From Octopus sinensis (Eukaryota), in contig NW_021828015.1 of the NCBI RefSeq assembly GCF_006345805.1, positions 1 through 64,000 of the forward strand: a stretch of 64,000 bases of DNA, in the 5' to 3' direction. Shown in pieces: positions 1-35,392 of this stretch (the first letter of the stretch is position 1; each line of letters begins with the position of its first letter). Under the pieces are notes generated by a model. That model was given only the letters and a program-made list of their open reading frames with translations. It was not told the DNA's origin and ran no database searches. The position numbers and the translations under genes are program-made.

Positions 1-2520
1 TGCTGTGGCTGTGTAGTCCTAGCCGGGACAAACACTCCCTCTGGCAGTGCCGTAAATGTAGCGAAGACTTTGCCTGACTGGTTGTAATGTAATCGTTTCT
101 TTGTTGACGTCTTTTCTGTCTTTCCATTTCTCCTTTCTCACTATGTCACTCCTTTGTGTTCCCTTTTTCACGGTACGTCGCCAATCTCCACGGTTGCTGG
201 CAACTGCTTCCCAGTTGGTAATATTGATGTTGAGGCATTCATGTCCCTTTTGCAAACACCTTGTATCGTAAGAAACGGTCTTCCCACAGACCTAGTGCCC
301 TAGCAAGCTCTCGTTGAGTATGTCCTTGGGGATTCTGCCATTTCCATACGGCTAACATGTCCAAGCCATCTCATACGTCTTTGTGTGAAGAGTGCAGACA
401 TGCTTGGTATTCCTGCTTGCTTGAGGACATCTTTGTTAGGGACATGATTCTGCCATTTGATGCGATGGATTTTCCGGAGACAGCGCAGGTGAAAGATATT
501 TAGGCGACGTATGGCGTCGTATGGCGTGTGTATGGCGTCAAAGTCATACAGTAGAGTGCTAAGTACACATGCCTGGTAAATCTTCATTTTTGTGGTCTTG
601 GTCAGCTTATTGTTGTCCCATGCGCGTTGGTGAGTGGGCCATCACAGCAGCTGCCTTGCCAATGCATATTGAGCTCAGCATCAAGGGATAGGTTGTAGGT
701 GACGGTAGAGCCAAGATAGGTAAACTTCCACCTCCTATACTCTGTGGTCCCAATATGTATGTTTGGGATGTCCGATGTAGCCGACCCATGATGTTGGTCT
801 TCTTGAGGCGATAACTAAGCCAAAGTTGCCAAATGCTTGCTCAAAACAGTTGCTGTGCCTTCGTAGGGTTCATCTGTGGTGATACTAGAGCGGCATCATC
901 AGCAAATAGCATCTCCTTGATCAGGATGCTTCTGAAATTTGGTCTTGGCACGCAGACGCGAGAGAGATTGAACAGTTCCCATCACTTCTACTGTGCAGAA
1001 ACACTCCATCATCTGATGTCTCAAAGGCATGTGACTGCAGCAGCGAGAAGATGCCAAATAATGTAGGAGCAAGGACACAACCTTGCTCTACCCATTTTTT
1101 ATTGGAAGGCGTTGATGTGAAACCATTGTGCTGTATGGTGCCTTGCATATTAGCATGGAATGATTTGAGTGATCCTCAGCAGCTTTGGTGGACATCGATT
1201 TTTTGAGCAGGATGAAGAGGCATTTTCTACTTACCAAGTCAAAGCCCTTTGTCAGATCATGAAGGCCATATATAATGGCATTTGCTCTCTGGACTTCTGA
1301 AGTTGGCGTATGGAGAAAATATCATGTCAATAGTGATCTGCTTCTAAAGCCACACTGCGATCTGGATAAATTCGAGAAGCAATAGTTGCAGCCTGGACAG
1401 GATAATGCAAGCAGAGGCCTTTCCAACTGTGCTTAGAAGAGATTATTCCACGGTAATTGTTACAATCATCACGGTCACTTTTATTTTTGTAAAGCGTAAT
1501 GATGTTAGCATCCCGCATATTCTGAGGGACTGTACCCTCTTACCTGCACTGACACAGAAGCTCATGAATGTGCCGAAGCAGGAGGATGGTGTTTTGCCGG
1601 TTGATGATCTCTAAGGGGATGCCGTCTTTTCCGGAGCCTTGTTACTGCTAGGGAGTCAATAGATTTGGTGAGCTCTGCTATAGATGGCAGACTGTCAAGT
1701 TTCACACATGACTGGCAAGATCTTGACACCTCGATTGCGCCTCAGCTACCGTGGTCTCTCGTGAGTAGAGATCCTGGTAGTACTCCATCCATCTATCCAT
1801 TTGCTTGTTTGGTCCCTGATGAGATCTCCAGTAGTTGATTTCAGAGGGGGCTGAGGTATTGCGGATGGACGAGGGTTCTTCAAACCGGCATACATCCCAC
1901 GGGTGTCGCCACTGTCAGCAGCTGACGGATACTCTGACAGATTTCCTTCAATACCCATTTGCATAGCGTCTGGCAGTCAGTGGGTTTTATTCTTGCCTTT
2001 CTGAGTTCTTCGTGTGACTTTGTAAGAAGAACCACTCTTGTATTGCATCAGAGCTGTACGCTTGCTTCGATAACTGGTTCCAGCTCTGAGAGCCCAGCAC
2101 TGAACAAAATCTGGGTTTTACCTTTCTCTCATTCCTGAAAGTATCTATTGATGTGGTTATACAAGTTCCCTGATATAATTCCACCTACTTTCAGCAGAGG
2201 AGGTTGGGCAGCTAATGAGGGCAACCTTGATAAAAACAGCAAAACATTGTCGCAGTGTAGGGTTCGAGGTTTGGCATGTGTTAATGCGTGGTTGGCTAAT
2301 TTTCTGGAGTGATGGACTTTTTAGGCAGAATTCTCACCCTCTTATTAGTGAATGACGTATCACAATCCGCGCTAGGGTCAGTTGAACAGAATTCAGAAGG
2401 ATCTTCGTGTAATGATGAGATCCAATGATGCCATGGTGAGATCTTGGATGTCTCCAAGATGCCTTGTGGAGTCTGTGGGAAAGAATTGTGGTGATGCACA
2501 GGATGGTATGTGCAAAATTC
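1..2520 (-). mobile_element. Decayed RTE-clade (BovB-like) LINE: C-terminal part of APE endonuclease, RT and C-terminus
   Basis: Fragmented minus-strand ORFs carry RTE motifs: HPRS..H and SADCDT (end of APE, 2296-2582), DANIITLYKNK..DCNNYRGI (1327-1518), QGCVLAPTLF (921-1148), IYQACVLSTLLY..RRMRWLGHVSRM (300-587), WEAVASNRGDWR (19-255). Many frameshifts and stops. Confidence 0.9.
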
Positions 2521-2629
2521 AAGTAGTTCTGGCTATTATCATTCATGTCAATACTAAAACACATACACTTACATATATACATACATATATATACGATTGA
2601 TTCTTTCAGTTCCTGTCAACATGAAATCC

Positions 2630-2630
2630 A

Positions 2631-2689
<59 letters not shown>

Positions 2690-2720
2690 CATATATATAT
2701 GTATGTACAACACACACACA
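2630..2720. repeat. (TA)n/(CA)n microsatellite
   Basis: Direct inspection. Confidence 0.95.
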
Positions 2721-2755
2721 CCAAAGATAAATTGATAGATACAAACTGAGTGGGC

Positions 2756-2961
2756 AAACAACGTTAACTTAGAAATTACAATTCCGTTTTCATTTTGGTT
2801 TACAATTATGAGATCTTTTCATTCTGAAGCCAGTTTTTTCAAATTTTTCCTACTGAACCAAACAATTTGAAACTTCGTATACTGGTAGAATGTGTCAAAA
2901 GTAAACTTAATTGTAAACCAGAATGAAAACGGAATTGTAACTTCTAAGTTTAACGTTGTTT
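2756..2961. mobile_element. MITE-like element with ~54-bp terminal inverted repeats
   Basis: 2756-2808 (AAACAACGTTAACTTAGAAATTACAATTCCGTTTTCATTTTGGTTTACAATTA) is the near-perfect reverse complement of 2908-2961. No clear TSD. Confidence 0.7.
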
Positions 2962-3334
2962 AATAATTCGAATTTTAACCAATGATATTCCGTCATTCGG
3001 CTTTATTTTATTTACTCCGTCTCGACCACCAATTTGCTGACGTATTAAACATCTGAAATGTAAATAAAACGCATAAATCGCCTTCTAATTATTTAACGTA
3101 CTCATGTTTCCAGGATCCTATAGTCAGCCACCTTCTAATAACAATATTTAAAAGTAGTTAATAAGCCACATTATAAATTGAAAATGTTTCCATTCTGTTT
3201 ACTTGGCTTTCGTTTGCTATTAAGAAGTGGAATCTCAGTGACGAGGCTTCTAACAAGATTTCGTTTCTAAGCTAATGCGTTTCATTTCACTTATTGTATT
3301 TATTGTGCAAAAGGCAAGAAATTTAAATTAAAAA

Positions 3335-3445
3335 AGCAAAGAGCTGGCAGAAACGTTAGCACGCCGGGCGAAATGCGTAGCCGTATTTCGTCTGCCGTTA
3401 CGTTCTGAGTTCAAATTCCGCCGAGGTTGATTTTGCCTTTCATCA
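3335..3445 (+). mobile_element. Truncated tRNA-derived SINE (same family as 32638 and 50552)
   Basis: GAGCTGGCAGAAACGTTAGCACGCCGGGCGAAATG...GAGTTCAAATTCC (A/B-box-like) matches the two full copies. Confidence 0.85.
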
Positions 3446-3458
3446 TACATACATACAT

Positions 3459-3498
<40 letters not shown>

Positions 3499-3540
3499 AC
3501 ACACATACATACATACATACATACATACATACATACATAC
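3445..3540. repeat. (TACA)n/(CA)n microsatellite
   Basis: Direct inspection. Confidence 0.95.
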
Positions 3541-5214
3541 CCAAAGATATAGCAGAAAAGAAGTTTGCCAATGTCCAGCGACGTGAGGACCAAAGAACTG
3601 AGGTATTTCGTATTGCTAGACAGTGTGTGAGAGAAAATAGTGATGTTACAGGGGAGAAATGTGTCCGCATGGATGATGGGGCACTTGCTTTTAATGTTGG
3701 TGAAAAGAAAGAGGCTTGGAGAAGCCATTATGAAAGACTGTTGAATGTGGAGAATGAATGGGAGGAGGAGAGGCCAAATGTTGACCCAGTAGAGGGACCA
3801 GCTATCCAAATAGACAGCTCACTTGTAGTTAAGGCAATTAAGGATATGAAACCAGGTAAAGCCCCCGGCCCATCAGGAATCACTGCTGAGATGCTTAAAA
3901 CAGCTGGTTATGCGGGCTATGGCCTAGTCACCCGTATTGTTAACCAGGTAGTTCATAATGGAGTCATACCCAATGACTGGCGTAGCAGCACCATAGTCAA
4001 CTACTACAAGGGTAAGGGTGATGCTCTAGATAGAAATAACTACAGGGGTATTAAAACTGTTGGATCAGGTGATGAAGGCCACAGAGAGGGTCATAACCCA
4101 TCTCATTAGGGAGAGAATTTGCTTAGATGAGATGCAGTTCGGTTTTGTGTCGGGTAGAAGCACCACTGATGCTAGATTCCTGGTCCGACAACTGCTGGAG
4201 AAATACCTAGCTAAAGATAAACCCCTCTACATAGCTTTTGTGGACTTGGAGAAAGCCTTGACAGGGTTCCCCGATCCCTTATCTGGTGGTCGATGCGGAA
4301 ACTGTTGATTCACGAATGGCTAATAAGGGCTGTACAGGCTCTATACAGAGAGGCTGTCAGCAAGGTTAGGATTGGCAACGAATATAGTGAAAAATTCCGG
4401 GTAGAAGTAGGTGTACACCAGGGCTCAGCCCTCAGTCCCCTTTTATTCATCATAGTCCTCCAGGCAATAACAGAGGAATTCAAAACAGGTTGCCCCTGGG
4501 AGCTCCTCTATGCTGATGACCTGGCCCTCATAGCAGAATCGCTACCGGAACTAAAAAAGAAATTTCGGGTGTGGAAACAAGGGTTGGAATCAAAGGGCCT
4601 TAGAGTAAATGTAGCGAAGAACAAAGTTATAGTATGCAGAAAGGCGAACTCAGCACACACCCCATCGGGCAGGTGGCCCTGCTCGAGCTGTAGGAAAGGT
4701 GTAGGTAGAAACTCCATAAGATGCACCCAATGTAAGCTTGGACGCACAAGAGGTGCAGCAACATTAAAGGGAAATTAACAGATAAGATAGCTTTCATGTG
4801 CGGCAGATGCACAGGGACAATAGACACCACAGACACTCAGAAACAGATTCCATCACACTCCAGGGAGAGAAACTAGAAGTAGTTGATAGTTTCCGCTACC
4901 TGGGTGACCAAGTTAGTAGTGGGGGTGGATGCTCAGAGAGTGTCACCACTAGAACACGAATAGCCTGGGCAAAGTTTAGAAAGCTGCTACCCCTACTGGC
5001 GACAAAGGGTCTCTCACTCAGAGTGAAAGGTAGATTGTATGATGCATGTGTGCGAACTGCCATGCTTCACGGCAGTGTGAAACATGGGCCGTGACTGCAG
5101 AGGACATGCGTAGACTTGAAAGAAATGAAGCTAGCATGATCCGCTGGATGTGTAATGTCAGTGTGAATGCACGACAGAGTGTAAGCACCCTGAGAGAAAT
5201 GCTAGGCATAAGAA
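3541..5214 (+). mobile_element. 5'-truncated RTE-clade LINE, RT region (5' segment, interrupted by a CR1 insertion)
   Basis: Overlapping ORFs 3627-4109 (KAPGPSGI..EMLK, NYRGIK), 4060-4308 (QFGF..GRSTTDA..FVDLEKA), 4293-4778 (GVHQGSALSPLLF..LLYADDL), 4798-5094 (FRYLG). The frame reads ..REMLGIR at 5214 and resumes SIRCG.. at 8326. Confidence 0.93.
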
Positions 5215-8200
5215 TCCGTGGCTTCCCTAAATCGCAACTCTGTGCCACAGGAGAGTTTTAGCCTCCGCGATGATGGGCAGATCTGGACATTCGTCAAGTC
5301 TGGTGAGTCGTGGATAAGGGATGCCAGCTGGACTGAGCAGACTACACCCACAACAACTGGCAATGCAAAAATCTTGGGGAAACTAACCAAGAACAATCAG
5401 CCATCCCCTGTATATCATCATCTGAAATCCAGATATAAACTGCTGTCCTTGAATGCCCGTAGTTTATGCAACAAGGTGCATCTTTTTGTCTCTACGTCAA
5501 AAGTATCAACCCAGATTTCATCACAGTCACGGAAACGTGGGCACACTCTGCACTCTGTGATGGAGTTTTCAGCATAGCCGGCTACAACCTGTTCCGCAAA
5601 GACCGCATTAATCGCCGTGGAGGGGGTGTGATGATTTATGTTCGATCAAGTCTTTCGGCAATCCCCTGTGATGATTTGAACCAATCTCAGCAGGAGGTAT
5701 TTTTCTGCAATGTACACATGACCATGTCAACACTTCTGCTCGGAGTCGTTTACCGTCCTCCAAATTATCGCCAAGACGCACAGCTTTTTGATCTCCTCAG
5801 GGCGGCTGCCATGAAAACAGCCACATATGTGTATGTTGCGGGGGACTTCAATTCCCTGAGATTGACTGGGAGGCCTTCCGTTGGCCGCAAAGTGCAGACG
5901 ATTTTCTTGAACTGGTGCTGAATTCGAATTGGTCCCAAGTTGTTACCCCCCACAAGGGGGTAACAAACACTTTGGATCTGCTACTAACCGCTTCTCCTGA
6001 AACAATCATTAGTGTCGCTACCGAAGAACCTTTGGGGACTCTGATCATTCCATGATCATGGCCGATTGTCTCTGATTGGTTGTAACAAAAAACACAACCA
6101 TCTTCAGATTGCCCGCTTTGACTGGAATAAAGCAAACTGGAGCTCTTATTGTACTGAGCTGCAACGCCCAAACTGCGCGCGAATTTTATGCCTCTGGAGA
6201 TGTGGACACTATACTCCAGAACATTCTGAATTCAATATGGGCAGCATGTGCAGCATCAGTACCACGCAAGCACAAAAAACCACCCAATAGTGCAATTTGG
6301 GAGACTGCAGCAGTCCGACTTGCCAGGAAAGAACGCCGTAATGCTGAACGGGAATACAAATTGCATAAATCAGAGAGCAACAGGAAAAAGCGCAATAGGT
6401 CAGCCAACCACCTCAAGCAGGTGACAAAAAAGGCAGTGCTTGAATTTGAACAACGCATTGCAGCTAACCCTGACAGCAAAGGGTTCTGGAAGTATGTGCA
6501 CTCAAAGCAGAGACCCCACTCTCCTGTTGGTCCCCTTCGCAATCCCCACACAGGACAGATTACTGGCAATCCCGAAGAATGTGCAGAAATCATTGCTGGA
6601 TGCTATGCCGGCATCTTTACTGTCGAAGACCAAAATGTTCCATCATCATCACCACTGACATCGGACTCTATATCTTCTATGCAATTTACACCAGCAATGC
6701 TGCAACGCCACCTAAAGATTAAACGCAATTATGCCTCTCCTGGTCTCAATGGTGTTACATACCTAGTTCTCAAATGCAGTGGGTACTTTCTTCTAAGCCA
6801 ACTTTCTCTATTCTTCCAATTCTGTCTCGACAATGGTGTTACTCCAGAACAGTGGAAAACTGCCAGTGTCATCCCTCTGTTAAAAAAAGGCGACCGCACA
6901 TCGCCTGTCAACTATCGCCCCGTCAACTATCGCCAAACTGATGGAATCCTGTATCAGAGAAACCCTCTGGAACTTCTGGAAGTCTCACAGCCTCAGCCAG
7001 CCGTCACAATTCGGATTTATTCCTAACTCCAGCTGCTGTAATCAACTCATCGAGTTTCTTGAGGACGTTACCCAAATCACTGATCGCGGATCCTGGGTGG
7101 ATGTTGTTTACCTGGACTTTGCTAAGGCTTTTAACTCTGTGCCACACAAAAGACTTATGGTGAAGCTTTCTGCGTTGGGTGTAAGAGACGAACTCTATAA
7201 CTGGTTAAAGTCCTTTATTTTCGGCCGAAAAGAGGTTGTCACAGTTCTAGGACAGCACTCTTCGCCCTATGAGATGACATCTGGTGTGCCGCAGGGATCT
7301 GTTCTTGGCCCTCTTTTATTTGTTGCATATGTTAATGACATAGATGCCAACTTAAAGAATGCCACAGTGCTGAAATATGCAGATGACATCAAGCTGTACC
7401 TCCAAATAAAGAGGTCAAATCCTGTACACTATGGATCTCTATTGCAAGCAGACCTGGACACAATGCAGCAGTGGATCATGGACTGGCAACTCAAGCTGGC
7501 TGTGGACAAATGTACCACCATGCATTTTGGGAGGAGAAACCCAGCGTCCACCTACTCCCTCCACACACTAGTCTCAAAAAGTCTTCAAGTGAACGTGACC
7601 TGGGTGTTATTGTCGACAGTGATTTGCGTTGGACAAAACACATCGCTAAAATTGTCAAGAAGGCTGAGGGTGTCTTGGCATCACTCACCAAATCCTTTGT
7701 GAGCGCTCTCCGGCTATCTATCTGCGGCTTTATATAGCTATGGTAAGACCTCACCTGGAATTTGCATCACCGGTCTGGAACCCTTATCTTCCCAGGACAT
7801 CAATCGTCTAGAAGCTGTTCAGCGACGTGCAACCAAAAGAATACCCTCCATCAGGCATTTGCCATATCCTGAACGCCTTACTTCCCTGGGCATGGACACA
7901 TTAAAACTCCGACGTCTGGCAGCTGACTTGGCAGACACCCATAAAATTATCAACCATCGCACAAACAATAACTCTGAGCACCTCTTCAAACTCCACCCAT
8001 CTAACACCCGTGGACATATTTACAAAGTAAGAAAACAGCACAGCTCCCATGACTTCAGGAAACATTTTTTCACGCTGAGAGTTGCTGAAGCGTGGAACAA
8101 ACTGCCGGCATCGGTTGTTAGTTGTCGGAGCACTGCATCCTTCAAAACTTCATGCTTCCTGAGATTCGCCAACACTACACTTGATTTTCTCCCTTCCATA

Positions 8201-8318
8201 CACACACAAGCATGTTCACTTTCCAGACATTTCTACATTGCTGCATGTACTTTATATGCACTTCTGACAAGTTGTGGTGCACCTGAGCACTGTATACAAT
8301 AATTTCATTATTATTATT
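5215..8318 (+). mobile_element. CR1-clade LINE: essentially complete ORF2 (APE + RT), 5'-truncated, (ATT)n tail, 7-bp TSD
   Basis: APE motifs LNARSL, VTETW, RKDR..GGGV, VYRPP, GDFN (5430-5860). RT motifs YLDFAKAF.SVPH, SGVPQGSVLGPLLF, KYADD (6941-7702). C-terminal RRLAADL..K and FFTLRV..WNKLP. ATAAGAA occurs at 5208-5214 and 8319-8325. Confidence 0.93.
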
Positions 8319-18129: not shown

Positions 18130-18770
18130 GTGTGTGTATATGGGTGAATGTACCATTCTGTGTATGTGTGTGCGTGTGTGTGTATGTGTAGGTGAGTGTG
18201 TCATTTTATGTGTGTGTATGTAGGCAAATGTGTTATTCTATGTGTGGGGGTGGGTGAATGTGTCATTTTCTGTGTGTGTGTATGTGTGTGTTTGTAGGTG
18301 AGTGTGTCATTTTGTGTGTGTGTATGTGGGTGGATGTGTCATTCTGTGTGTGTGTGTGTATGTTGGTGAATGTGTTATTTTGTGTGTGTGTATGTGTGCT
18401 ATTTTGTGTGTGTATGTGGGTGAATGTGTCATTTTGTGTGTATATATGTGGGTGAATGTGTCATTCTGTGTGTGTGTATGTGGGTGAATGCATCATTTTG
18501 TGTGTGTATATGTAGGAGAATGTGTTATTTTGTGTCTGTGTCATTTTGTGTGCGTGTCATTTTGTGTGTGTGCATGTAGGTGAATATATCATTTTATGTA
18601 CATGTGTGTATGTGGGTAAATGTGTCATTCTGTGTGTGTATGTAGATGAATGTGTCATTTTGTGTGTGTGTATGTAGGTGAATATGTAATTTTATGTACA
18701 TGTGTGTATGTGGATGAATGTTTCATTTTGTGTGTGTAGATGAATGTGTCATTTTGTGTGTGTGTCATTT
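18130..18770. repeat. TG-rich minisatellite (~30-40-bp unit GTGTGTATGTGGGTGAATGTGTCATTTT)
   Basis: Repeated GAATGTGTCATT(T/C)TGTGTG units. Confidence 0.9.
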
Positions 18771-19800: not shown

Positions 19801-20171
19801 AATACCATTCCAGTCAGACCTATGATCAAAGCCAGCCCAATCATCTTTTTTCTTAAAATCATACTTGGTGTATACTGATCTATAATATCAACTTTGTCTT
19901 TTTGTTTTTTAAAGACAGAAAGATGTTGTCTGAGGAAGATCTGACTGTTATTTTTATGTAGTTTAGTTGAGCAATCATTCAGAGCTCAAAACAAAGAAGT
20001 AAACAGTAAGTAAATATCGTAACGTATTTTTGCCATTTCAATATGGCTAACCCCTAAGGGTGGATGCTACTGTAGTTTTTAGCCCCAGGAGGACACACTC
20101 CTCCAGCTGGCCATAGACACACTTTCTGTGTCCTGTCAGTATTTGCAAAGGGAAGTCATCCTTCCCGTCTT

Positions 20172-20241
20172 CAACTTATGATACACACGGACTCGAGTTT
20201 CGAGGTATTGACCTCTCGTCAGCGTGTGACAATCATAGTTG
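20172..20241 (-). ncRNA. Type I hammerhead ribozyme (first of 11 minus-strand copies)
   Basis: Reverse complement of the motif at 24110-24179. Confidence 0.9.
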
Positions 20242-23200
20242 TCGCCGAGAATTAGATTCCTTCACAAATACTTATACTTTTTCCAGCGTCCACTGTCGCT
20301 GATTTGAAAAAGTGAAATCAAACAATGAATAAATATCAAAGTTAGTATATACAGTACTAGCGGTGTAACACATCGTAACGTATTTTTGCCATTTCAATAT
20401 GGCTAACCCCTAAGGGTGGATGCTACTGTAGTTTTTGGCCCCAGGAGGACACACTCCTCCAGCTGGCCATAGACACACTTTCTGTGTCCTGTCAGTATTT
20501 GCAAAGGGAAGTCATCCTTCCCGTCTTCAACTTATGATACACACGGACTCGAGTTTCGAGGTATTGACCTCTCGTCAGCGTGTGACAATCATAGTTGTCG
20601 CCGAGAATTAGATTTCCTTCACAAATACTTATACTTTTTCCAGCGTCCACTGTCGCTGATATTGAAAAAGTGAAATCAAACAATGATAAATATCAAAGTT
20701 AGTTATATACAGTAGCGGTAACACATCGTAACGTTTTTTGCCATTTCAATATGGCTAACCCTAAGGGTGGATGCTACTGTAGTTTTTAGCCCCAGGAGGA
20801 CACACTCCTCCAGCTGGCCATAGACACACTTTCGTGTCCTGTCAGTATTTGCAAAGGGAAGTCATCCTTCCCGTCTTCAACTTATGAACACACGGACTCG
20901 AGTTTCGAGGTATTGACCTCTCGTCAGCGTGTGACAATCATAGTTGTCGCCGAGAATTAGATTTCCTTCACAATACTTATACTTTTTCCAGCGTCCACTG
21001 TCGCTGATATTGAAAAAGTGAAATCAAACAATGATAAATATCAAAGTTAGTTATATACAGTAGCGGTAACACATCGTAACGTATTTTTGCCATTTCAATA
21101 TGTAAACCCTAAGGGTGGATGCTACTGTAGTTTTTAGCCCCAGGAGGACACACTCCTCCAGCTGGCCATAGACACACTTTCTGTGTCCTGTCAGTATTTG
21201 CAAAGGGAAGTCATCTTCCCGTCTTCAACTTATGATACACACGGACTCGAGTTTCGAGGTATTGACCTCTCGTCAGCGTGTGACAATCATAGTTGTCGCC
21301 GAGAATTAGATTTCCTTCACAAATACTTATACTTTTTCCAGCGTCCACTGTCGCTGATATTGAAAAAGTGAAATCAAACAATGATAAATATCAAAGTTAG
21401 TATATACAGTAGCGGTAGGGTAACACATCGTAACGTATTTTTGCCATTTCAATATGGCTAACCCTAAGGGTGGATGCTACTGTAGTTTTTAGCCCCAGGA
21501 GGACACACTCCTCCAGCTGGCCATAGACACACTTTCTGTGTCCTGTCAGTATTTGCAAAGGGAAGTCTCCTTCCCGTCTTCAACTTATGATACACACGGA
21601 CTCGAGTTTCGAGGTATTGACCTCTCGTCAGCGTGTGACAATCATAGTTGTCGCCGAAATTAGATTTCCTTCACAAATACTTATACTTTTTCCAGCGTCA
21701 CTGTGTGCTGATATTGAAAAAGTGAAATCAAACAATGATAAATATCAAAGTTAGATATACAGTAGCGGTAACACATCGTAACGTATTTTGCCATTTCAAT
21801 ATGGCTAACCCTAAGGGTGGATGCTACTGTAGTTTTTAGCCCCAGGAGGACACACCCTCCAGCTGGCCATAGACACACTTTCTGTGTCCTGTCAGTATTT
21901 GCAAAGGGAAGTCATCCTTCCCGTCTTCAACTTATGATACACACGGACTCGAGTTTCGAGGTATTGACCTCTCGTCAGCGTGTGACAATCATAGTTGTCG
22001 CCGAGAATTAGATTTCCTTCACAAATACTTATACTTTTTCCAGCGTCCACTGTCGCTGATATTGAAAAAGTGAAATCAAACAATGATAAATATCAAAGTT
22101 AGTTATATACAGTAGCGGTAACACATCGTAACGTATTTTTGCCATTTCAATATGGCTAACCCCTAAGGGTGGATGCTACTGTAGTTTTTAGCCCCAGGAG
22201 GACACACTCCTCCAGCTGGCCATAGACACACTTTCTGTGTCCTGTCAGTATTTGCAAAGGGAAGTCATCCTTCCCGTCTTCAACTTATGATACACACGGA
22301 CTCGAGTTTCGAGGTATTGACCTCTCGTCAGCGTGTGACAATCATAGTTGTCGCCGAGAATTAGATTTCCTTCACAAATACTTATACTTTTTCCAGCGTC
22401 CACTGTCGCTGATATTGAAAAAGTGAAATCAAACAATGATAAATATCAAAGTTAGTTATATACAGTAGCGGTAACACATCGTAACGTATTTTTGCCATTT
22501 CATATGGCTAACCCCTAAGGGTGGATGCTACTGTAGTTTTTAGCCCCAGGAGGACAACTCCTCCAGCTGGCCATAGACACACTTTCTGTGTCCTGTCAGT
22601 ATTGCAAAGGGAAGTCATCCTTCCCGTCTTCAACTTTGATACACACGGACTCGAGTTTCGAGGTATTGACCTCTCGTCAGCGTGTGACAATCATAGTTGT
22701 CGCCGAGAATTAGATTTCCTTCACAAATACTTATACTACTTTTTCCAGCGTCCACTGTCGCTGATATTGAAAAAGTGAAATCAAACAATGATAAATATCA
22801 AAGTTAGTTATATACAGTAGCGGTAACACATCGTAACGTATTTTTGCCATTTCAATATGGCTAACCCTAAGGGTGGATGCTACTGTTTTTAGCCCCAGGA
22901 GGACACACTCCTCCAGTGGCCATAGACACACTTTCTGTGTCCTGTCAGTATTTGCAAAGGGAAGTCATCCTTCCCGTCTTCAACTTATGATACACACGGA
23001 CTCGAGTTTCGAGGTATTGACCTCTCGTCAGCGTGTGACAATCATAGTTGTCGCCGAGAATTAGATTTCCTTCACAAATACTTATACTTTTTCCAGCGTC
23101 ACTGTCGCTGATATTGAAAAAGTGAAATCAAACAATGATAAATATCAAAGTTAGTTATATACAGTAGCGGTAACACATCGTAACGTATTTTTGCCATTTC

Positions 23201-24109
23201 AATATGGCTAACCCCTAAGGGTGGATGCTACTGTAGTTTTTAGCCCAGGAGGAACACTCCTCCAGCTGGCCATAGACACACTTTCTGTGTCCTGTCAGTA
23301 TTTGCAAAGGGAAGTCATCCTTCCCGTCTTCAACTTATGATACACACGGACTCGAGTTTCGAGGGATTGACCTCTCGTCAGCGTGTGACAATCATAGTTG
23401 TCGCCGAGAATTAGATTTCCTTCACAAATACTTATACTTTTTCCAGCGTCCACTGTCGCTGATATTGAAAAAGTGAAATCAAACAATGATAAATATCAAA
23501 GTTAGTATATTACAGTAGCGGTAACACATCGTAACGTATTTTTGCCATTTCAATATGGCTAACCCCTAAGGGTGGATGCTACTGTAGTTTTTAGCCCCAG
23601 GAGGACACACTCCTCCAGCTGGCCATAGACACACTTTCTGTGTCCTGTCAGTATTTGCAAAGGGAAGTCATCCTTCCCGTCTTCAACTTATGATACACAC
23701 GGACTCGAGTTTCGAGGTATTGACCTCTCGTCAGCGTGTTGACAATCATAGTTGTCGCCGAGAATTAGATTTCCTTCACAAATACTTATACTTTTTCCAG
23801 CGTCCACTGTCGCTGATATTGAAAAAGTGAAATCAAACAATGATAAATATCAAAGTTAGTTATATACAGTAGCGGTAACACATCGTAACGTATTTTTGCC
23901 ATTTCAATATGGCTAACCCCTAAGGGTGGATGCTACTGTAGTTTTTAGCCCCAGGAGGAAATGGCAAAAATACGTTACGATGTGTTACCGCTACTGTATA
24001 TAACTAACTTTGATATTTATCATTGTTTGATTTCACTTTTTCAATATCAGCGACAGTGGACGCTGGAAAAAAGTATAAGTATTTGTGAAGGAAATCTAAT
24101 TCTCGGCGA

Positions 24110-24179
24110 CAACTATGATTGTCACACGCTGACGAGAGGTCAATACCTCGAAACTCGAGTCCGTGTGTATCATAAGTTG
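24110..24179 (+). ncRNA. Type I hammerhead ribozyme
   Basis: CAAC-UAUGAU-ugu-CACACG / CUGACGA (24129-35) / GAGGU-caau-ACCUC / GAAA (24150-53) / C-ucga-G / UC, predicted cleavage after C24161 / CGUGUG-u-AUCAUA-a-GUUG. All three helices pair and the core is canonical. Confidence 0.93.
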
Positions 24180-24462
24180 AAGACGGGAAGGATGACTTCC
24201 CTTTGCAAATACTGACAGGACACAGAAAGTGTGTCTATGGCCAGCTGGAGGAGTGTGTCCTCCTGGGGCTAAAAACTACAGTAGCATCCACCCTTAGGGG
24301 TTAGCCATATTGAAATGGCAAAAATACGTTACGATGTGTTACCGCTACTGTATATAACTAACTTTGATATTTACATTGTTTGATTTCACTTTTTCAATAT
24401 CAGCGACAGTGGACGCTGGAAAAAAGTATAAGTATTTGTGAAGGAAATCTAATTCTCGGCGA

Positions 24463-24532
24463 CAACTATGATTGTCACACGCTGACGAGAGGTCAATACC
24501 TCGAAACTCGAGTCCGTGTGTATCATAAGTTG
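24463..24532 (+). ncRNA. Type I hammerhead ribozyme (second plus-strand copy)
   Basis: Same motif; CUGACGA at 24482-24488, predicted cleavage after C24514. Confidence 0.92.
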
Positions 24533-25279
24533 AAGACGGGAAGGATGACTTCCCTTTGCAAATACTGACAGGACACAGAAAGTGTGTCTATGGCCAGCTG
24601 GAGGAGTGTGTCCTCCTGGGGCTAAAAACTACAGTAGCATCCACCCTTAGGGGTTAGCCATATTGAAATGGCAAAAATACGTTACAATGTGTTACCGCTA
24701 CTGTATATAACTAACTTTAATATTTATCATAGTAAGTAAATAATTCAATGAAAAGAAGAAAAATATAAGATATGGTAAAAAAAAAGGATATTTCACTAAA
24801 ATCTCAAGAACAAAGTTAACAGGGCTTGATAATTTAATGCTATAAAAACTTCATTTAAATGTCATTAAAATCTCATTAAAATATCATCAAAATGCCATTA
24901 AATGACAAGGTTTTTTATTTAATTGTCTCCGTTACAGTACAATAAAGATTATTCTTGGAAGGTAGCTGATGAAATAAATCATAAAAGAAATAAAGGAAAC
25001 ATGAAAAATAACAGAAAAAAATTGGTTGATTAAAATTCCTTCTTTTAGTTTTATTATTATTTTTACTTTCTTTTACTTGTTTTGGTCATTTGATGGTGAC
25101 CATGCTGGGGCACTGCTTTGAAGGGTTCTAGTTGAACAAATCAACCCAAGGAATTAAAATTTATTTTAAAAGTCTGGTATTTATTCTATCAGTCTTTCTT
25201 GCCAAATTGCTAAGTTATGAGAATGTAAACACACCAAGCAGTGGCAGGTAACAAAAACAGACAGAAACACACAAACACA

Positions 25280-33205: not shown

Positions 33206-35392
33206 GGGTGGAATGGGAATAAGCTTAGTAATTATTCCATCAGTCTCTTTTTGCAGAACTGTTAAGAACCAGCATCGGTTGTCAAGTGATGGTGGGGAGT
33301 AAACACAGACATACACACACACACACACACATACATATATATATTTATTGAATTCATAAAAGGTGTTTTTTTTTTTCTAATTTATATATATATATATTAT
33401 ATTTTGTGAAATTTGATTTAGTATTTCTAAATTGAATTTTTCCCTCTAAGTTTGGAATAATATTCCCTCATATATATATATATATTATATATATTATTGT
33501 GTATAAATAATTTAAGCATTTATTAATCATTTAGTCATGAAAGAGGTGACCTGTGACAGGACACCTTACATGCTAGAAAGGGCAGTCAAAGCCCAAACCA
33601 CGAATAAGAGCAATTTCAAAGGGAATGAAAATAAAAAAATATTTTTGTACTTACCCTCAAACTTGAGTTTCGGTATCAATGTACAAATAAATTAATTTGC
33701 CATCCGTACTTCATCTGTGAAGTCGATAAAATTAATGCACATTTATGCAGCAAATAGCACCGAAAACACACGTGCACACCAGTTTTAGTATGTATGTGTG
33801 TGAACGTGTGTGTGGGGTGTATTCTGCATAAGTTCGGAAATGGTGACCAGGGAAAATTTTTCCTGAATATAATAAGATTTCAGCATATATATTGACAATA
33901 GAATATAATCTAATATTGTAGCATAATCCTCGTCGTTTAACATCCACTTTCTATGCTGGCATAGGTTGAATGGTTTGACTGAGGACTGACAAGTCAGAAG
34001 ACCGCACCAGGCTCCAGTCTGATCTGGCAAAGTTTCTACAGCTGCATGCCCTTCCTAACACTAACCACTCCAAGAGTGAAGTGGGTGCTTTATACATGCC
34101 ATCTGCATGAGGGCCAGTCAGGCGGTACTGGCATCGACCACACTTGAATGGTGCTTTTTGCATGCCACCGGCACAGGAGCCAGTCAGGGGCTGGCACTGG
34201 CAGCAACCATGCTCGATTGGTGCTTTTTACACACCACTGGCATGGGAGCCAGTCAGGGGGCACTGGCAACAACCATGCTTGAATGGTGCTTTTTACATGC
34301 CACCAGCACAGGACCAGTCAGGCGACACAAAAAATGGGTATTAGTACACATTGCTATCGAACTCACACCTCTTACTTTCGCAATAAGTGTGCTACCAATT
34401 ACACCAACAATCTCATCCATCTTTGCTTCATTAAGTTTAAGAACTATGACTTCATAGTGGTGTGTATACATGCATATTCTTCATAATTTAAGAAAAAATG
34501 ATAAGTGAAAATTTTGCATAAATATGATTGTAAGTTTTCACTGACTACACAAAATAATCTAATATTGGGACACATAAACCCACAAACGCTACCTGTTTTC
34601 ATGCACTTGTTCTTGGTTCTTCTGAAGAAAATATTATGAATTCATCACATCATGATACACAACCATCAAAATTCGTGGTAGTTAATACTATCTTTGCTTT
34701 TTTCATTTATGATTAGCATTGCCTCAGTATTTCATCTGCTTACACAATATGCATTGTTATATGAACCAGTTACAGATCATTTGAAACAGGTGTAAAGATT
34801 AGACTATTTTACACCTGTTATTGTTTGTCCAACCTTTTTGGGGGTTAGAGGATTAATATCAATCCTTCACCTACCTGACTCTTCTACCTCTGGACTACTT
34901 CTAACAACTTTGTATGACCATGGTACTCATTTACAACTATTGTGCAATGTTAAAACAAAGAAACATAAACACATACATATGCATGTATATGTATGTGTAT
35001 TGTAAATATATATATATATATACATACATATATATTAATTGAAGTGTATTATATATCCATTACAGCTGATCTTACCAATTGTTTTTGCAATAGGAATTCA
35101 ATGATGTGTTAGGTAACAGTCCAATTATGTAACACTGCACTCTTCAGAGGTAACCATTAAGGAATGAAATCGACCATTATCGATATATAATACTGTACAC
35201 TGTGATTCATATACCCACTCTAGTAGAGTGGGTATATGAGGGAAGATATATGAGTGCGTTTTTTTAGTGGCTTATAGATTCTTAGATGGCTTACAGACAC
35301 ACACACACACATTCACATATATCTATATATCTATATCTATATGCATGTATATATATACATATATATATATATGTATATATATACATATATAC

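What the first reader, a model, noticed from the sequence alone, without database searches (positions are those of the whole stretch)
20017..24730. Retrozyme-like array: 13 tandem canonical type I hammerhead ribozymes in a ~350-nt non-coding monomer
Seen: every full monomer holds CACACG-CUGACGA-GAGGU(caau)ACCUC-GAAA-C(ucga)G-UC-CGUGUG, with helix I extended by UAUGAU/AUCAUA and CAAC/GUUG. Monomers are nearly identical (periods 347-356 bp, mostly 1-nt indels). Established: tandem type I hammerhead monomers of a few hundred nt (newt satellite 2, Schistosoma Sm-alpha, metazoan retrozymes) are transcribed as multimers, self-cleave to monomers, and can accumulate as circular RNAs. Inference: this is a young, probably active cephalopod retrozyme family producing ~353-nt linear/circular RNAs. 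I do not know of it being described in octopus, but cannot check.
Basis: partly seen in the sequence, partly recalled or inferred. Interest (0 to 1): 0.95.

Follow-up and report, generated by a model that had tools for sequence, protein, structure and literature searches.

The report
Hammerhead-ribozyme retrozyme insertion, two inverted arms
This 4.7-kb block is one insertion of a young, non-coding mobile element whose 353-base units each carry a self-cleaving hammerhead ribozyme; the kind is already known from other animals, but the way the copies sit in this genome points to Penelope-like retrotransposons as the machinery that copies them.

Summary
The repeat is real: 13 units of about 353 bp at 20017-24730, each with a canonical type I hammerhead core. 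It is not one head-to-tail array. Eleven ribozymes lie on the minus strand (20017-23959). Two lie on the plus strand (23958-24730). The arms meet head-to-head at a 2-nt overlap, and a 12-bp target-site duplication (AGTAAGTAAATA) flanks the whole block.

Rfam Hammerhead_1 scores 32.2 bits per copy, just under the gathering score of 34 (E = 3.8e-5).

The host genome (2.72 Gb) holds 725 copies of this ribozyme in roughly 435 dispersed loci. In 42 insertions examined:
- arms always end at fixed 3' positions and are cut short at variable 5' positions;
- two-arm insertions always point tails-out, with one short and one 42-45-nt longer end (24 of 24);
- 37 of 42 abut (TA)n repeats;
- locus-private variants are shared by all units of both arms.

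These are the published hallmarks of Penelope-like element (PLE) insertions. Intact PLE genes exist in the genome, but no partner sharing the element's 3' end was found.

Verdict: a non-LTR retrozyme family, a new member of a known kind, apparently undescribed in cephalopods. RNA cleavage and circles remain untested.

The parts
20005..20016 (.). Left copy of the 12-bp target-site duplication AGTAAGTAAATA
   Evidence: Read directly. It is the longest common string of the two flanks. In the joined-flank search the left flank covers query 1-297 and the right flank 286-597, so they overlap by exactly these 12 nt.
20017..23959 (-). Left arm, 11.2 units with the ribozyme on the minus strand. The outer end at 20017 is the 'short' 3' end (unit position 174, ...AAAAATACGTTACGAT). 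There are 10 full units, and the inner unit is 5'-truncated at unit position 97 (23959).
   Evidence: TRF and BLAST of the unit against the window. In RNA sense, unit boundaries (cleavage sites) fall between 20190|20189, 20546|20545, 20895|20894, 21244|21243, 21599|21598, 21946|21945, 22299|22298, 22648|22647, 22999|22998, 23349|23348 and 23702|23701.
20184..20228 (-). Hammerhead ribozyme, exact 45-nt motif
20540..20584 (-). Hammerhead ribozyme, exact 45-nt motif
20889..20933 (-). Hammerhead ribozyme, exact 45-nt motif
21238..21282 (-). Hammerhead ribozyme, exact 45-nt motif
21593..21637 (-). Hammerhead ribozyme, exact 45-nt motif
21940..21984 (-). Hammerhead ribozyme, exact 45-nt motif
22293..22337 (-). 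Hammerhead ribozyme, exact 45-nt motif
22642..22686 (-). Hammerhead ribozyme, exact 45-nt motif
22993..23037 (-). Hammerhead ribozyme, exact 45-nt motif
23343..23387 (-). Hammerhead ribozyme variant: A->C at the loop 2 / fifth helix II pair (AAUACC becomes AAUCCC). The catalytic core is intact.
   Evidence: Not listed by Rfam at E <= 10.
23696..23741 (-). Hammerhead ribozyme variant: a 1-nt insertion in the 5' strand of helix I (CAACACG). The core is intact.
   Evidence: Rfam 27.3 bits
23958..23959 (.). Head-to-head junction of the two arms. A 2-nt overlap (GA) is shared by both arms: unit position 97 of the minus arm meets unit position 151 of the plus arm.
   Evidence: TRF changes to the reverse-complement consensus here. 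Inverted repeats across the junction are 97-100% complementary.
23958..24730 (+). Right arm, 2.2 units with the ribozyme on the plus strand. The inner end is 5'-truncated at unit position 151. The outer end at 24730 is the 'long' 3' end (...TTAATATTTATCAT).
24123..24167 (+). Hammerhead ribozyme, exact motif; predicted cleavage after C24161
24476..24520 (+). Hammerhead ribozyme, exact motif; predicted cleavage after C24514
24689..24730 (+). The 42-nt 'tail': the stretch of the unit beyond the short 3' end, present at only one end of the insertion
   Evidence: The same asymmetry is seen in 24 of 24 two-arm insertions.
24731..24742 (.). Right copy of the 12-bp target-site duplication AGTAAGTAAATA

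Best explanation
The block 20017-24730 is a single retrotransposition event of a young non-LTR retrozyme family. The unit is about 353 nt, non-coding, and carries one type I hammerhead.

Proposed cycle, with each step marked as shown or inferred:
1. Genomic arrays are transcribed as multimers (inferred).
2. Adjacent hammerheads fold and cut after GUC, giving 353-nt monomers. They probably act as double hammerheads, because helix III is only A-U plus C-G closed by the palindromic loop UCGA. The motif and its predicted folding are shown; cleavage is inferred.
3. The long interrupted helix I holds the two ends together, and a cellular RNA ligase closes the circle (inferred by analogy with coral, mussel and axolotl retrozymes).
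4. A reverse transcriptase/endonuclease of a Penelope-like element nicks a target, usually a (TA)n microsatellite. It starts cDNA synthesis at a fixed place in the RNA, unit position about 171-174 or about 216-219. It then runs round the circle, or along a multimer, several times. This makes a tandem array whose units are all alike and whose far end is cut short at a random position. The architecture is shown; the enzyme and the circular template are inferred.
5. The second nick primes a second cDNA in the same way. The two cDNAs are joined through 0-7 nt of microhomology. This gives two arms head-to-head with their 3' ends outwards, one end carrying a 42-45-nt tail, and a target-site duplication (12 bp here). 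The architecture is shown; the mechanism is inferred.
For: Ribozyme.
- All conserved core positions and three helices are present, with loops closing helices II and III and helix I open, which makes it type I.
- Each copy matches RF00163 at E = 3.8e-5.

Mobility.
- 725 copies of the 45-nt motif lie on many chromosomes, against 0 for the reversed control.
- The first 100 hits form 60 loci, so there are roughly 435 loci in all.
- Copies are 95-100% identical.
- A 12-bp target-site duplication flanks this insertion. Duplications of 10-12 bp are seen at L032, L059 and L040, the other loci outside (TA)n where one could be read.

Retro-type architecture in 42 insertions.
- Outer ends are always 3' ends, at unit position 165-175 or 209-223.
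- Inner ends vary.
- Mixed-strand loci are always minus-then-plus. The only exceptions are places where two insertions adjoin.
- 24 of 24 two-arm insertions have one short and one long end.
- Junctions with overlap share 1-7 nt; the rest have 0-15 unmatched nt.

PLE signatures as described by Craig et al. 2021 (PMC8557442).
- That paper lists partial tandems, an adjacent inverted 5'-truncated copy, a 30-40-bp tail at one end, and a (TA)n bias.
- Here 37 of 42 insertions abut (TA)>=4, while (TA)>=5 covers 3.6% of the window.
- The genome has at least 147 GIY-YIG matches, many inside intact 781-aa frames.
- One such frame, fetched as L071, is an RT plus GIY-YIG PLE bounded by (TA)n.
- PLE fragments lie within 300 bp of the retrozyme in 2 of the 41 other loci fetched.

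One template per array.
- 47 locus-specific variants are fixed in every unit of both arms, against 10 that are polymorphic.
- In the window, three variants are present in 13-15 of 13-15 units.

RNA structure.
- The circular unit folds at -111.9 kcal/mol against -80.8 +/- 5.2 for shuffles (z = -6.0).
- Two ribozyme domains co-fold as a double hammerhead with helix III formed in trans: -50.9 against 2 x -23.1 kcal/mol.
Against: - No RNA data: transcription, cleavage and circles are untested.
- No autonomous PLE sharing the element's 3' end or its ribozyme was found. The three PLE copies at hand (L071, L048, L060) show no similarity to the unit and no hammerhead.
- The RF00163 score is 1.8 bits under the curated cut-off.
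- Uniform arrays could equally come from uncleaved multimeric transcripts of uniform parent arrays, so a circular template is not proven.
- Among copies, the ribozyme has as many variable sites as the rest of the unit: 15 of 45 against 101 of 308.
- One 81%-identical old copy does not show more compensatory changes than slid controls.
- The 11-unit arm may have grown after insertion.
Confidence: 0.7

Rival explanations
1. It is a retrozyme, but it is copied by a LINE-type reverse transcriptase. The inverted arm would then arise by ordinary twin priming, as in human L1 insertions, and Penelope-like elements would play no part.
For: Tails-out inverted arms joined by microhomology, 5' truncation and 10-12-bp target duplications are also what L1 twin priming produces (established knowledge; architecture). 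LINE fragments are present in the window itself. No PLE partner was identified.
Against: The one-short, one-long end rule (24 of 24), the 42-45-nt tail and the strong (TA)n association are described for PLEs and are said not to be seen in LINE insertions (PMC8557442). There is no poly(A) at the 3' ends. Type I hammerheads are a PLE feature (PMC4209133). PLE fragments share the same (TA)n sites.
Confidence: 0.15
2. It is ordinary satellite DNA that grew by unequal crossing-over. The hammerhead would be a passive relic and no RNA intermediate would be involved.
For: The units are tandem and nearly identical. At 13 units this array is larger than any other locus seen, which hold 1-10 units, so some local expansion is possible. 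A 2026 preprint favours local amplification of retrozyme arrays.
Against: There are about 435 dispersed loci on many chromosomes. Arms end at the same two 3' positions at every locus and have variable 5' truncations. Target-site duplications are present. Head-to-head arms share private variants. Unequal crossing-over explains none of these.
Confidence: 0.05
3. It is a DNA-level element: a foldback-type or other cut-and-paste transposon with long inverted arms made of tandem repeats.
For: Two inverted arms flanked by a target duplication look superficially like a foldback transposon.
Against: The two termini are never the same: one is short and one is long in 24 of 24 cases. 18 of 42 insertions have a single arm. 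Arm lengths and inner junctions differ at every locus, which is 5' truncation. No transposase and no fixed terminal inverted repeat are present.
Confidence: 0.04
4. The inversion at 23958 is an assembly artefact, a palindromic chimaera of noisy long reads on an unplaced contig. The true locus would be a simple tandem array.
For: The window lies on an unplaced contig, C4486. The array shows a long-read error profile. Complex PLE-type structures are known to trouble assemblies.
Against: The same minus-then-plus architecture recurs in at least 24 insertions, most of them on chromosome-scale scaffolds. The right arm runs into unique flank that repeats the 12 nt found at the left flank, which a read-level palindrome would not produce.
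Confidence: 0.03

Closest known systems
Animal non-LTR retrozymes (Cervera & de la Pena 2020, PMC7229834): Acropora about 230 bp, Mytilus 350-390 bp, axolotl 331/353 bp
   Same: Short tandem units, each with a type I hammerhead. GC is low (42% here). The units are non-coding and have no LTR. Copies are dispersed, with target duplications longer than 4 bp. The unit size of 353 bp falls in the mussel and axolotl range.
   Different: The host lineage is apparently a cephalopod, which is absent from that paper's main text. RNA forms are not tested here. Fixed 3' ends, head-to-head arms, a one-sided 42-nt tail and the (TA)n association are seen here, but the term searches of that paper turned up no mention of inverted arms, orientation or microsatellite targets.
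Newt satellite 2 and other canonical metazoan type I hammerheads (Rfam RF00163; described in PMC4209133)
   Same: The core is CUGANGA...GAAA...UH. Helix I has 6 bp before an internal loop. Loop 2 is of the (C)AAUA type. Helix III is very short and closed by a palindromic tetraloop, so a double-hammerhead dimer is expected.
   Different: The helix sequences differ. Position N7 is C. The score is 32.2 bits, just under Rfam's 34-bit cut-off.
Penelope-like elements (Craig et al. 2021, PMC8557442; Cervera & de la Pena 2014, PMC4209133)
   Same: The insertion anatomy matches: partial tandems, an adjacent inverted 5'-truncated copy, a 30-40-bp tail at one end only, a microsatellite (TA)n association, variable target duplications, and hammerheads in the repeats.
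   Different: There is no RT/GIY-YIG ORF, so the element is non-autonomous. The hammerhead is canonical rather than the minimal PLE form. No sequence similarity to any PLE copy examined was found.
Retrozyme-PLE link in vertebrates (Li, Clavereau & Pollet 2026, bioRxiv 10.64898/2026.07.22.740005)
   Same: The conclusion is the same: animal retrozymes are non-autonomous dependants or derivatives of PLEs. Retrozymes and PLEs occur together in one genome.
   Different: Their evidence is co-occurrence and homology between retrozyme and PLE repeats in Xenopus. The evidence here is the anatomy of the insertions. They favour local amplification of arrays. The arrays here look finished at insertion.
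L1 twin priming (5' inversion of LINE-1 insertions; from established knowledge, not checked in a paper here)
   Same: Two cDNAs are primed from the two nicks. The segments lie tails-out and are joined by microhomology inside one target duplication.
   Different: There is no poly(A). Both arms start at defined internal sites 42-45 nt apart. Both arms are multimeric.
Plant LTR retrozymes (PMC4918200)
   Same: Non-autonomous and hammerhead-bearing, with a circular RNA intermediate proposed.
   Different: The plant elements have type III hammerheads, LTRs with PBS and PPT, 4-bp target duplications, units of about 700 nt, high GC and Gypsy-type mobilisation. None of these applies here.

Membership tests
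Hammerhead ribozyme, type I (RF00163) | Conserved catalytic core: C3 U4 G5 A6 N7 G8 A9, G12 A13 A14, A15.1-U16.1, H17 | tested here: met
   The core reads CUGACGA ... GAA A...U C in all 13 copies.
Hammerhead ribozyme, type I (RF00163) | Three helices around the core, with helices II and III closed by loops and helix I open (type I topology) | tested here: met
   Helix I is CACACG/CGUGUG, extended by UAUGAU/AUCAUA and CAAC/GUUG. Helix II is GAGGU/ACCUC with loop CAAU. Helix III is A-U plus C-G with loop UCGA.
Hammerhead ribozyme, type I (RF00163) | Significant match to the curated covariance model | tested here: inconclusive
   Each copy scores 32.2 bits with E = 3.8e-5 in a 5.8-kb search. That is below the 34-bit gathering score, so the default search reports nothing.
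Hammerhead ribozyme, type I (RF00163) | Mg2+-dependent self-cleavage after H17 | not testable with these tools
   Only thermodynamic predictions are available. The single active fold is -17.2 kcal/mol against an alternative at -23.1. The double hammerhead is favoured for two copies at -50.9 kcal/mol.
Animal non-LTR retrozyme | Tandem units of about 150-450 bp, each carrying a type I hammerhead | tested here: met
   13 of 13 units of about 353 bp carry the motif.
Animal non-LTR retrozyme | Low GC, non-coding, no LTR | tested here: met
   GC is 42%. The longest open frame through a multimer is 66 codons. The insertion is bounded directly by the 12-bp duplication, with no terminal direct repeats other than the units themselves. 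PBS and PPT were not searched for specifically.
Animal non-LTR retrozyme | Dispersed genomic copies with target-site duplications longer than 4 bp | tested here: met
   725 ribozyme copies lie in roughly 435 loci. Duplications are 12 bp here and 10-12 bp at L032, L059 and L040.
Animal non-LTR retrozyme | Expressed as monomer-length linear and circular RNA | not testable with these tools
   No transcriptome data could be reached. The circular fold is unusually stable (z = -6.0), which is compatible but not evidence of expression.
PLE-dependent non-autonomous element | Partial tandem plus an adjacent inverted 5'-truncated copy | tested here: met
   24 of 42 insertions have two tails-out arms. 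All arms are 5'-truncated at variable positions.
PLE-dependent non-autonomous element | A 30-40-bp tail present at one end only | tested here: met
   24 of 24 two-arm insertions have one short end and one end 42-45 nt longer. This is slightly longer than the published range.
PLE-dependent non-autonomous element | Insertion bias for microsatellites | tested here: met
   37 of 42 insertions abut (TA)>=4, 31 of them at both ends. Background (TA)>=5 cover is 3.6-4.8%. The window's own copy is one of the five exceptions.
PLE-dependent non-autonomous element | 3'-end sequence shared with an autonomous PLE of the same genome | tested here: inconclusive
   No similarity to the three PLE copies at hand. 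At least 147 GIY-YIG loci exist, but no more could be fetched.
PLE-dependent non-autonomous element | Potentially active autonomous PLEs in the same genome | tested here: met
   Many GIY-YIG hits lie in uninterrupted 781-aa frames. L071 encodes RT plus GIY-YIG and is 58% identical to its best database relative, which carries RVT_1 and PLE-type Pfam domains.

The most novel reading that the evidence does not exclude
Each array, with both of its arms, is made in one step. A 353-nt circular ribozyme RNA would be copied by rolling-circle reverse transcription, started from both nicks of a Penelope-type endonuclease cut at two defined RNA sites 42-45 nt apart. If so, this family would give the first sequence-level picture of how circular-RNA retrozymes enter animal DNA. 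It would also explain the unexplained tandem/inverted/tail anatomy of Penelope-like insertions in general.
Probability: 0.35. Interest if true: 0.65.

Novelty: new member of a known kind. Interest (0 to 1): 0.42.

Why it matters
- It extends hammerhead retrozymes to what appears to be an octopus genome, where the searchable literature reports none.
- The family is young and uniform: 725 near-identical ribozymes. It is therefore a good candidate for an abundant small circular RNA in a lineage studied for its unusual RNA biology.
- The insertion anatomy is independent, structural support for the recent proposal that animal retrozymes ride on Penelope-like elements. That anatomy consists of fixed 3' ends, tails-out inverted arms, a one-sided tail, a (TA)n association, and private variants shared by all units.
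- The same anatomy suggests that arrays are built at the moment of insertion rather than by later satellite-style expansion.
- On the practical side, such blocks are easily mislabelled as satellites, and their inverted junctions are hard to assemble.

Tried and rejected
1. Search for the autonomous partner.
- GIY-YIG (PF01541) hits were listed across the genome.
- One intact PLE was fetched (L071). Two PLE fragments were found beside retrozyme copies (L048, L060).
- None shares sequence with the unit, and none has a hammerhead or a CUGANGA...GAAA motif.
- The protein database has no close copy of this genome's PLE. The best hit is 58% identical.

2. Rfam RF00163 over the whole genome. Only 74 of 265,664 first-look candidates were scored, so it is no census. 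It does show that other hammerhead families exist.

3. An empty-site allele. The joined flanks match only the window's own contig.

4. Relatives elsewhere. The 33-nt core has no exact match in metagenome or viral contigs.

5. Selection on the ribozyme. Per-copy substitutions are lower in the ribozyme (0.33% against 0.75%). The number of variable sites is the same (15 of 45 against 101 of 308). The copies are too young to tell.

6. Structure conservation between the young family and one 81%-identical old copy. This gave 4 compensatory and 19 broken pairs, against 0-3 and 16-25 for slid controls, which is uninformative. That copy does keep the core and the same 3' end, and it has one A-U to G-C compensatory change in helix II.

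7. Rejected readings: plain satellite, foldback DNA transposon and assembly palindrome (see the rival explanations).

Full report
**1. What is in the sequence**

Tandem Repeats Finder reports a 353-bp period from 20016 to 24730 but splits it in two. The first part, 20016-23959, has 11.2 copies. The second, 23958-24730, has 2.2 copies, and its consensus is the reverse complement of the first.

Two further minus-strand copies carry one change each:
- 23343-23387 has A->C at the loop 2 / helix II closing position.
- 23696-23741 has one extra base in helix I.

So there are 13 ribozyme-bearing units, as reported. They form two arms that meet head-to-head at 23958-23959, where a 2-nt GA is shared. 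The block is bracketed by a perfect 12-bp direct repeat, AGTAAGTAAATA, at 20005-20016 and 24731-24742. A search with the joined flanks confirms this: the two flank matches overlap by exactly those 12 nt.

Differences between units are about 35 small indel events, deletion-biased, with about half of the deleted bases in homopolymer runs. Only about 3-5 isolated substitutions occur in 3.9 kb. I read the 347-356-bp 'periods' mainly as long-read assembly noise (inference).

**2. The ribozyme**

All conserved core positions are present: CUGACGA, GAA, A15.1-U16.1, C17. Helices II and III are closed by loops and helix I is open, so this is a type I hammerhead.

Helix I is 6 bp.

Rfam's Hammerhead_1 model gives 32.2 bits per exact copy (E = 3.8e-5 in a 5.8-kb search). 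That is 1.8 bits under the curated gathering score, so the default scan of the window returns nothing.

Helix III is only A-U plus C-G, closed by the palindromic loop UCGA. This is the weak format described for canonical metazoan type I hammerheads, which cleave poorly alone and well as dimers (PMC4209133; PMC7229834). ViennaRNA agrees:
- The single active fold is -17.2 kcal/mol, against an inactive alternative at -23.1.
- Two ribozyme domains co-fold at -50.9 kcal/mol into a double hammerhead with an 8-bp helix III formed in trans.

These are predictions, not assays.

The 353-nt unit folded as a circle gives -111.9 kcal/mol, against -80.8 +/- 5.2 for dinucleotide shuffles (z = -6.0). The extended helix I closes the molecule. 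The unit is 42% GC and has no open frame over 66 codons, even when read through multimers.

**3. The family in the genome**

The window is contig C4486 of a 2.72-Gb assembly.

- The 45-nt ribozyme occurs 725 times within two mismatches, with 0 for the reversed control.
- The first 100 hits fall into 60 loci of 1-6 ribozymes each, which suggests roughly 435 loci in all.
- The window's 13-unit block is the largest seen.
- Units elsewhere are 95-100% identical to the window's.

I fetched 40 other loci and mapped every unit in coordinates that start at the cleavage site. In 42 insertions:

(a) Every outer end of an arm is a 3' end in ribozyme sense. It lies at one of two places: 'short' (position 165-175, ...AAAAATACGTCAC(GAT)) or 'long' (position 209-223, ...TTGATATTTATCAT(TGT)).

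(b) Inner ends are at variable positions, which is 5' truncation.

(c) 24 insertions have two arms, always minus-then-plus (3' ends outwards). Where the arms overlap they share 1-7 nt; in the other cases 0-15 unmatched nt lie between them. Three junctions are symmetric, meeting at the same or adjacent unit positions.

(d) All 24 two-arm insertions have exactly one short and one long end. The 18 single-arm insertions split 15 short to 3 long.

(e) 37 of 42 abut (TA)>=4, 31 of them at both ends. (TA)>=5 covers only 3.6% of the window.

The window's copy is one of the few outside a (TA)n run, which is why its target duplication can be read cleanly. Other readable duplications are 10-12 bp.

**4. 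One template per array**

Variants that distinguish a locus from the family consensus are almost always present in every unit of that locus, in both arms. There are 47 such fixed variants against 10 polymorphic ones, and several of the latter come from two adjacent insertions being pooled.

In the window, T>A at position 66, C>T at 169 and C>A at 199 are present in 13-15 of 13-15 units. Each array was therefore copied from one template sequence. That fits rolling-circle copying of a monomeric circle. It does not exclude an uncleaved multimeric transcript from an already uniform parent array.

**5. Which machinery**

Craig et al. 2021 list the peculiarities of Penelope-like element (PLE) insertions (PMC8557442):
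- partial tandems;
- an inverted 5'-truncated copy next to them;
- a 30-40-bp 'tail' often present at one end only;
- a microsatellite bias, with (TA)n named for the Naiad clade.

They add that the tandem/inverted repeats and the tail are not seen with LINEs. All four features are found here.

The genome has at least 147 GIY-YIG matches out of 4,846 first-look candidates. Many lie in uninterrupted 781-aa frames.

One such locus (L071) encodes RT plus GIY-YIG and is itself bounded by (TA)n. Its database relatives carry RVT_1 and PLE-type Pfam domains, some also GIY-YIG.

PLE fragments sit within 300 bp of retrozyme copies in 2 of the 41 other loci fetched. This is far more than the density of PLEs would give by chance (rough estimate, inference). 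It fits a shared target.

The missing piece is a PLE that shares the retrozyme's 3' end or its hammerhead. The three PLE copies I could examine do not. I could not fetch more. A LINE partner with ordinary twin priming therefore remains a live rival.

**6. Comparison with what is known**

The element meets every sequence-level criterion of the animal non-LTR retrozymes of Cervera & de la Pena 2020 (PMC7229834). Those authors already named PLEs as the likely mobilisers.

A 2026 preprint argues the same for vertebrates, from co-occurrence and from homology to PLE repeats in Xenopus (10.64898/2026.07.22.740005).

Term searches of the two papers found nothing about fixed 3' ends, tails-out arms, the one-sided tail or a (TA)n association for retrozymes. 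The preprint favours local amplification of arrays.

No paper in the library links hammerhead ribozymes or retrozymes to cephalopods, apart from a passing mention of cephalopod PLEs. Repbase and Dfam could not be consulted.

The host identity is an inference. The assembly size matches the published 2.72-Gb PacBio/Hi-C Octopus sinensis genome.

**7. Verdict**

The interpretation as a young retrozyme family is supported by independent genome-wide evidence. RNA cleavage and circularisation remain untested.

It is a new member of a known kind. Its added value is that the insertion anatomy points to PLE-type, two-nick, target-primed reverse transcription of a circular or multimeric RNA.

Two things remain unexplained:
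- the strict one-short, one-long end rule;
- the hint at L040 that part of the (TA)n at 3' ends is added rather than pre-existing.

Noticed in passing
window 3381-8302 (+) and 41319-41999 (-): Open frames typical of LINE-type retrotransposons. There is an endonuclease-like piece at 5463-5921, reverse-transcriptase pieces with YADD motifs at 4221-4778 and 6884-7702, and another retroelement-like frame on the minus strand near 41.3-42.0 kb.
   Followed up: no
G000, e.g. C13:29988995-29989039; C16:25146363 and 25146794; C13:23787518(-) and 23788041(+): Other hammerhead families exist in the same genome. One hit scores 48.2 bits. One same-strand pair lies 431 nt apart. One pair lies on opposite strands about 520 nt apart. 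Only 74 of 265,664 first-look candidates were scored.
   Followed up: no
L071 (G000:C6:12729800-12736300) 847-4738: An apparently intact Penelope-like element. It has a 781-aa RT plus GIY-YIG frame at 1421-3763, is bounded by (TA)n on both sides, and carries five copies of a repeat spaced 58-93 nt apart in its 3' UTR (3935-4284). No hammerhead was detected. Many genomic copies have the same uninterrupted frame length.
   Followed up: partly
L071 5464-6501: A second, unrelated element made of 99%-complementary inverted arms (237-269 nt), lying next to a (TA)n run. It looks like another tandem/inverted non-autonomous insertion.
   Followed up: no
L034 (G000:C9:28443300-28448900) 1551-2782 and 2818-4014: Two separate two-arm retrozyme insertions lie 35 nt apart in one (TA)n tract. 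Their inner junctions differ, so they are independent events at a hot spot.
   Followed up: partly
L040 (G000:C16:31318500-31322200) about 1530-1562 and 2166-2185: The 10-nt duplication ACATATGTAT is separated from the element's 3' end by (AT)9, which is absent beside the other copy of the duplication. Part of the (TA)n at 3' ends may therefore be an added tail rather than target. Overall, 3' ends abut (TA)n in 57 of 66 cases and 5' ends in 11 of 18.
   Followed up: partly
L058 (G000:C4:44088800-44092800) 640-1140 (-): An older subfamily copy, about 80% identical. It has the same 3' end, CUGAUGA instead of CUGACGA, one A-U to G-C compensatory change in helix II, and a broken G10.1-C11.1 pair.
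   Followed up: yes
protein database hits P0031, P0041, P0058, P0062, P0076, P0101, P0115: Eukaryote-type PLE proteins (RT plus GIY-YIG, 43-50% identical to the L071 frame) are filed under bacterial symbiont bins: Candidatus Thiodiazotropha and the Solemya velum gill symbiont. This probably reflects host bivalve DNA in those bins.
   Followed up: no
window 23887-23977, and (TA)n tracts in several loci: In E-value mode Rfam gives spurious microRNA-precursor matches on the hairpin at the inversion junction (mir-9461, 23.6 bits against a cut-off of 84) and on TA microsatellites.
   Followed up: yes
window 18174-18765, 34084-34322, 60582-61295: Three unrelated minisatellites with periods of 32/98, 66 and 21/125 bp. 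In all, TRF lists 147 tandem-repeat rows in 64 kb, mostly TA, CA and trinucleotide microsatellites.
   Followed up: no
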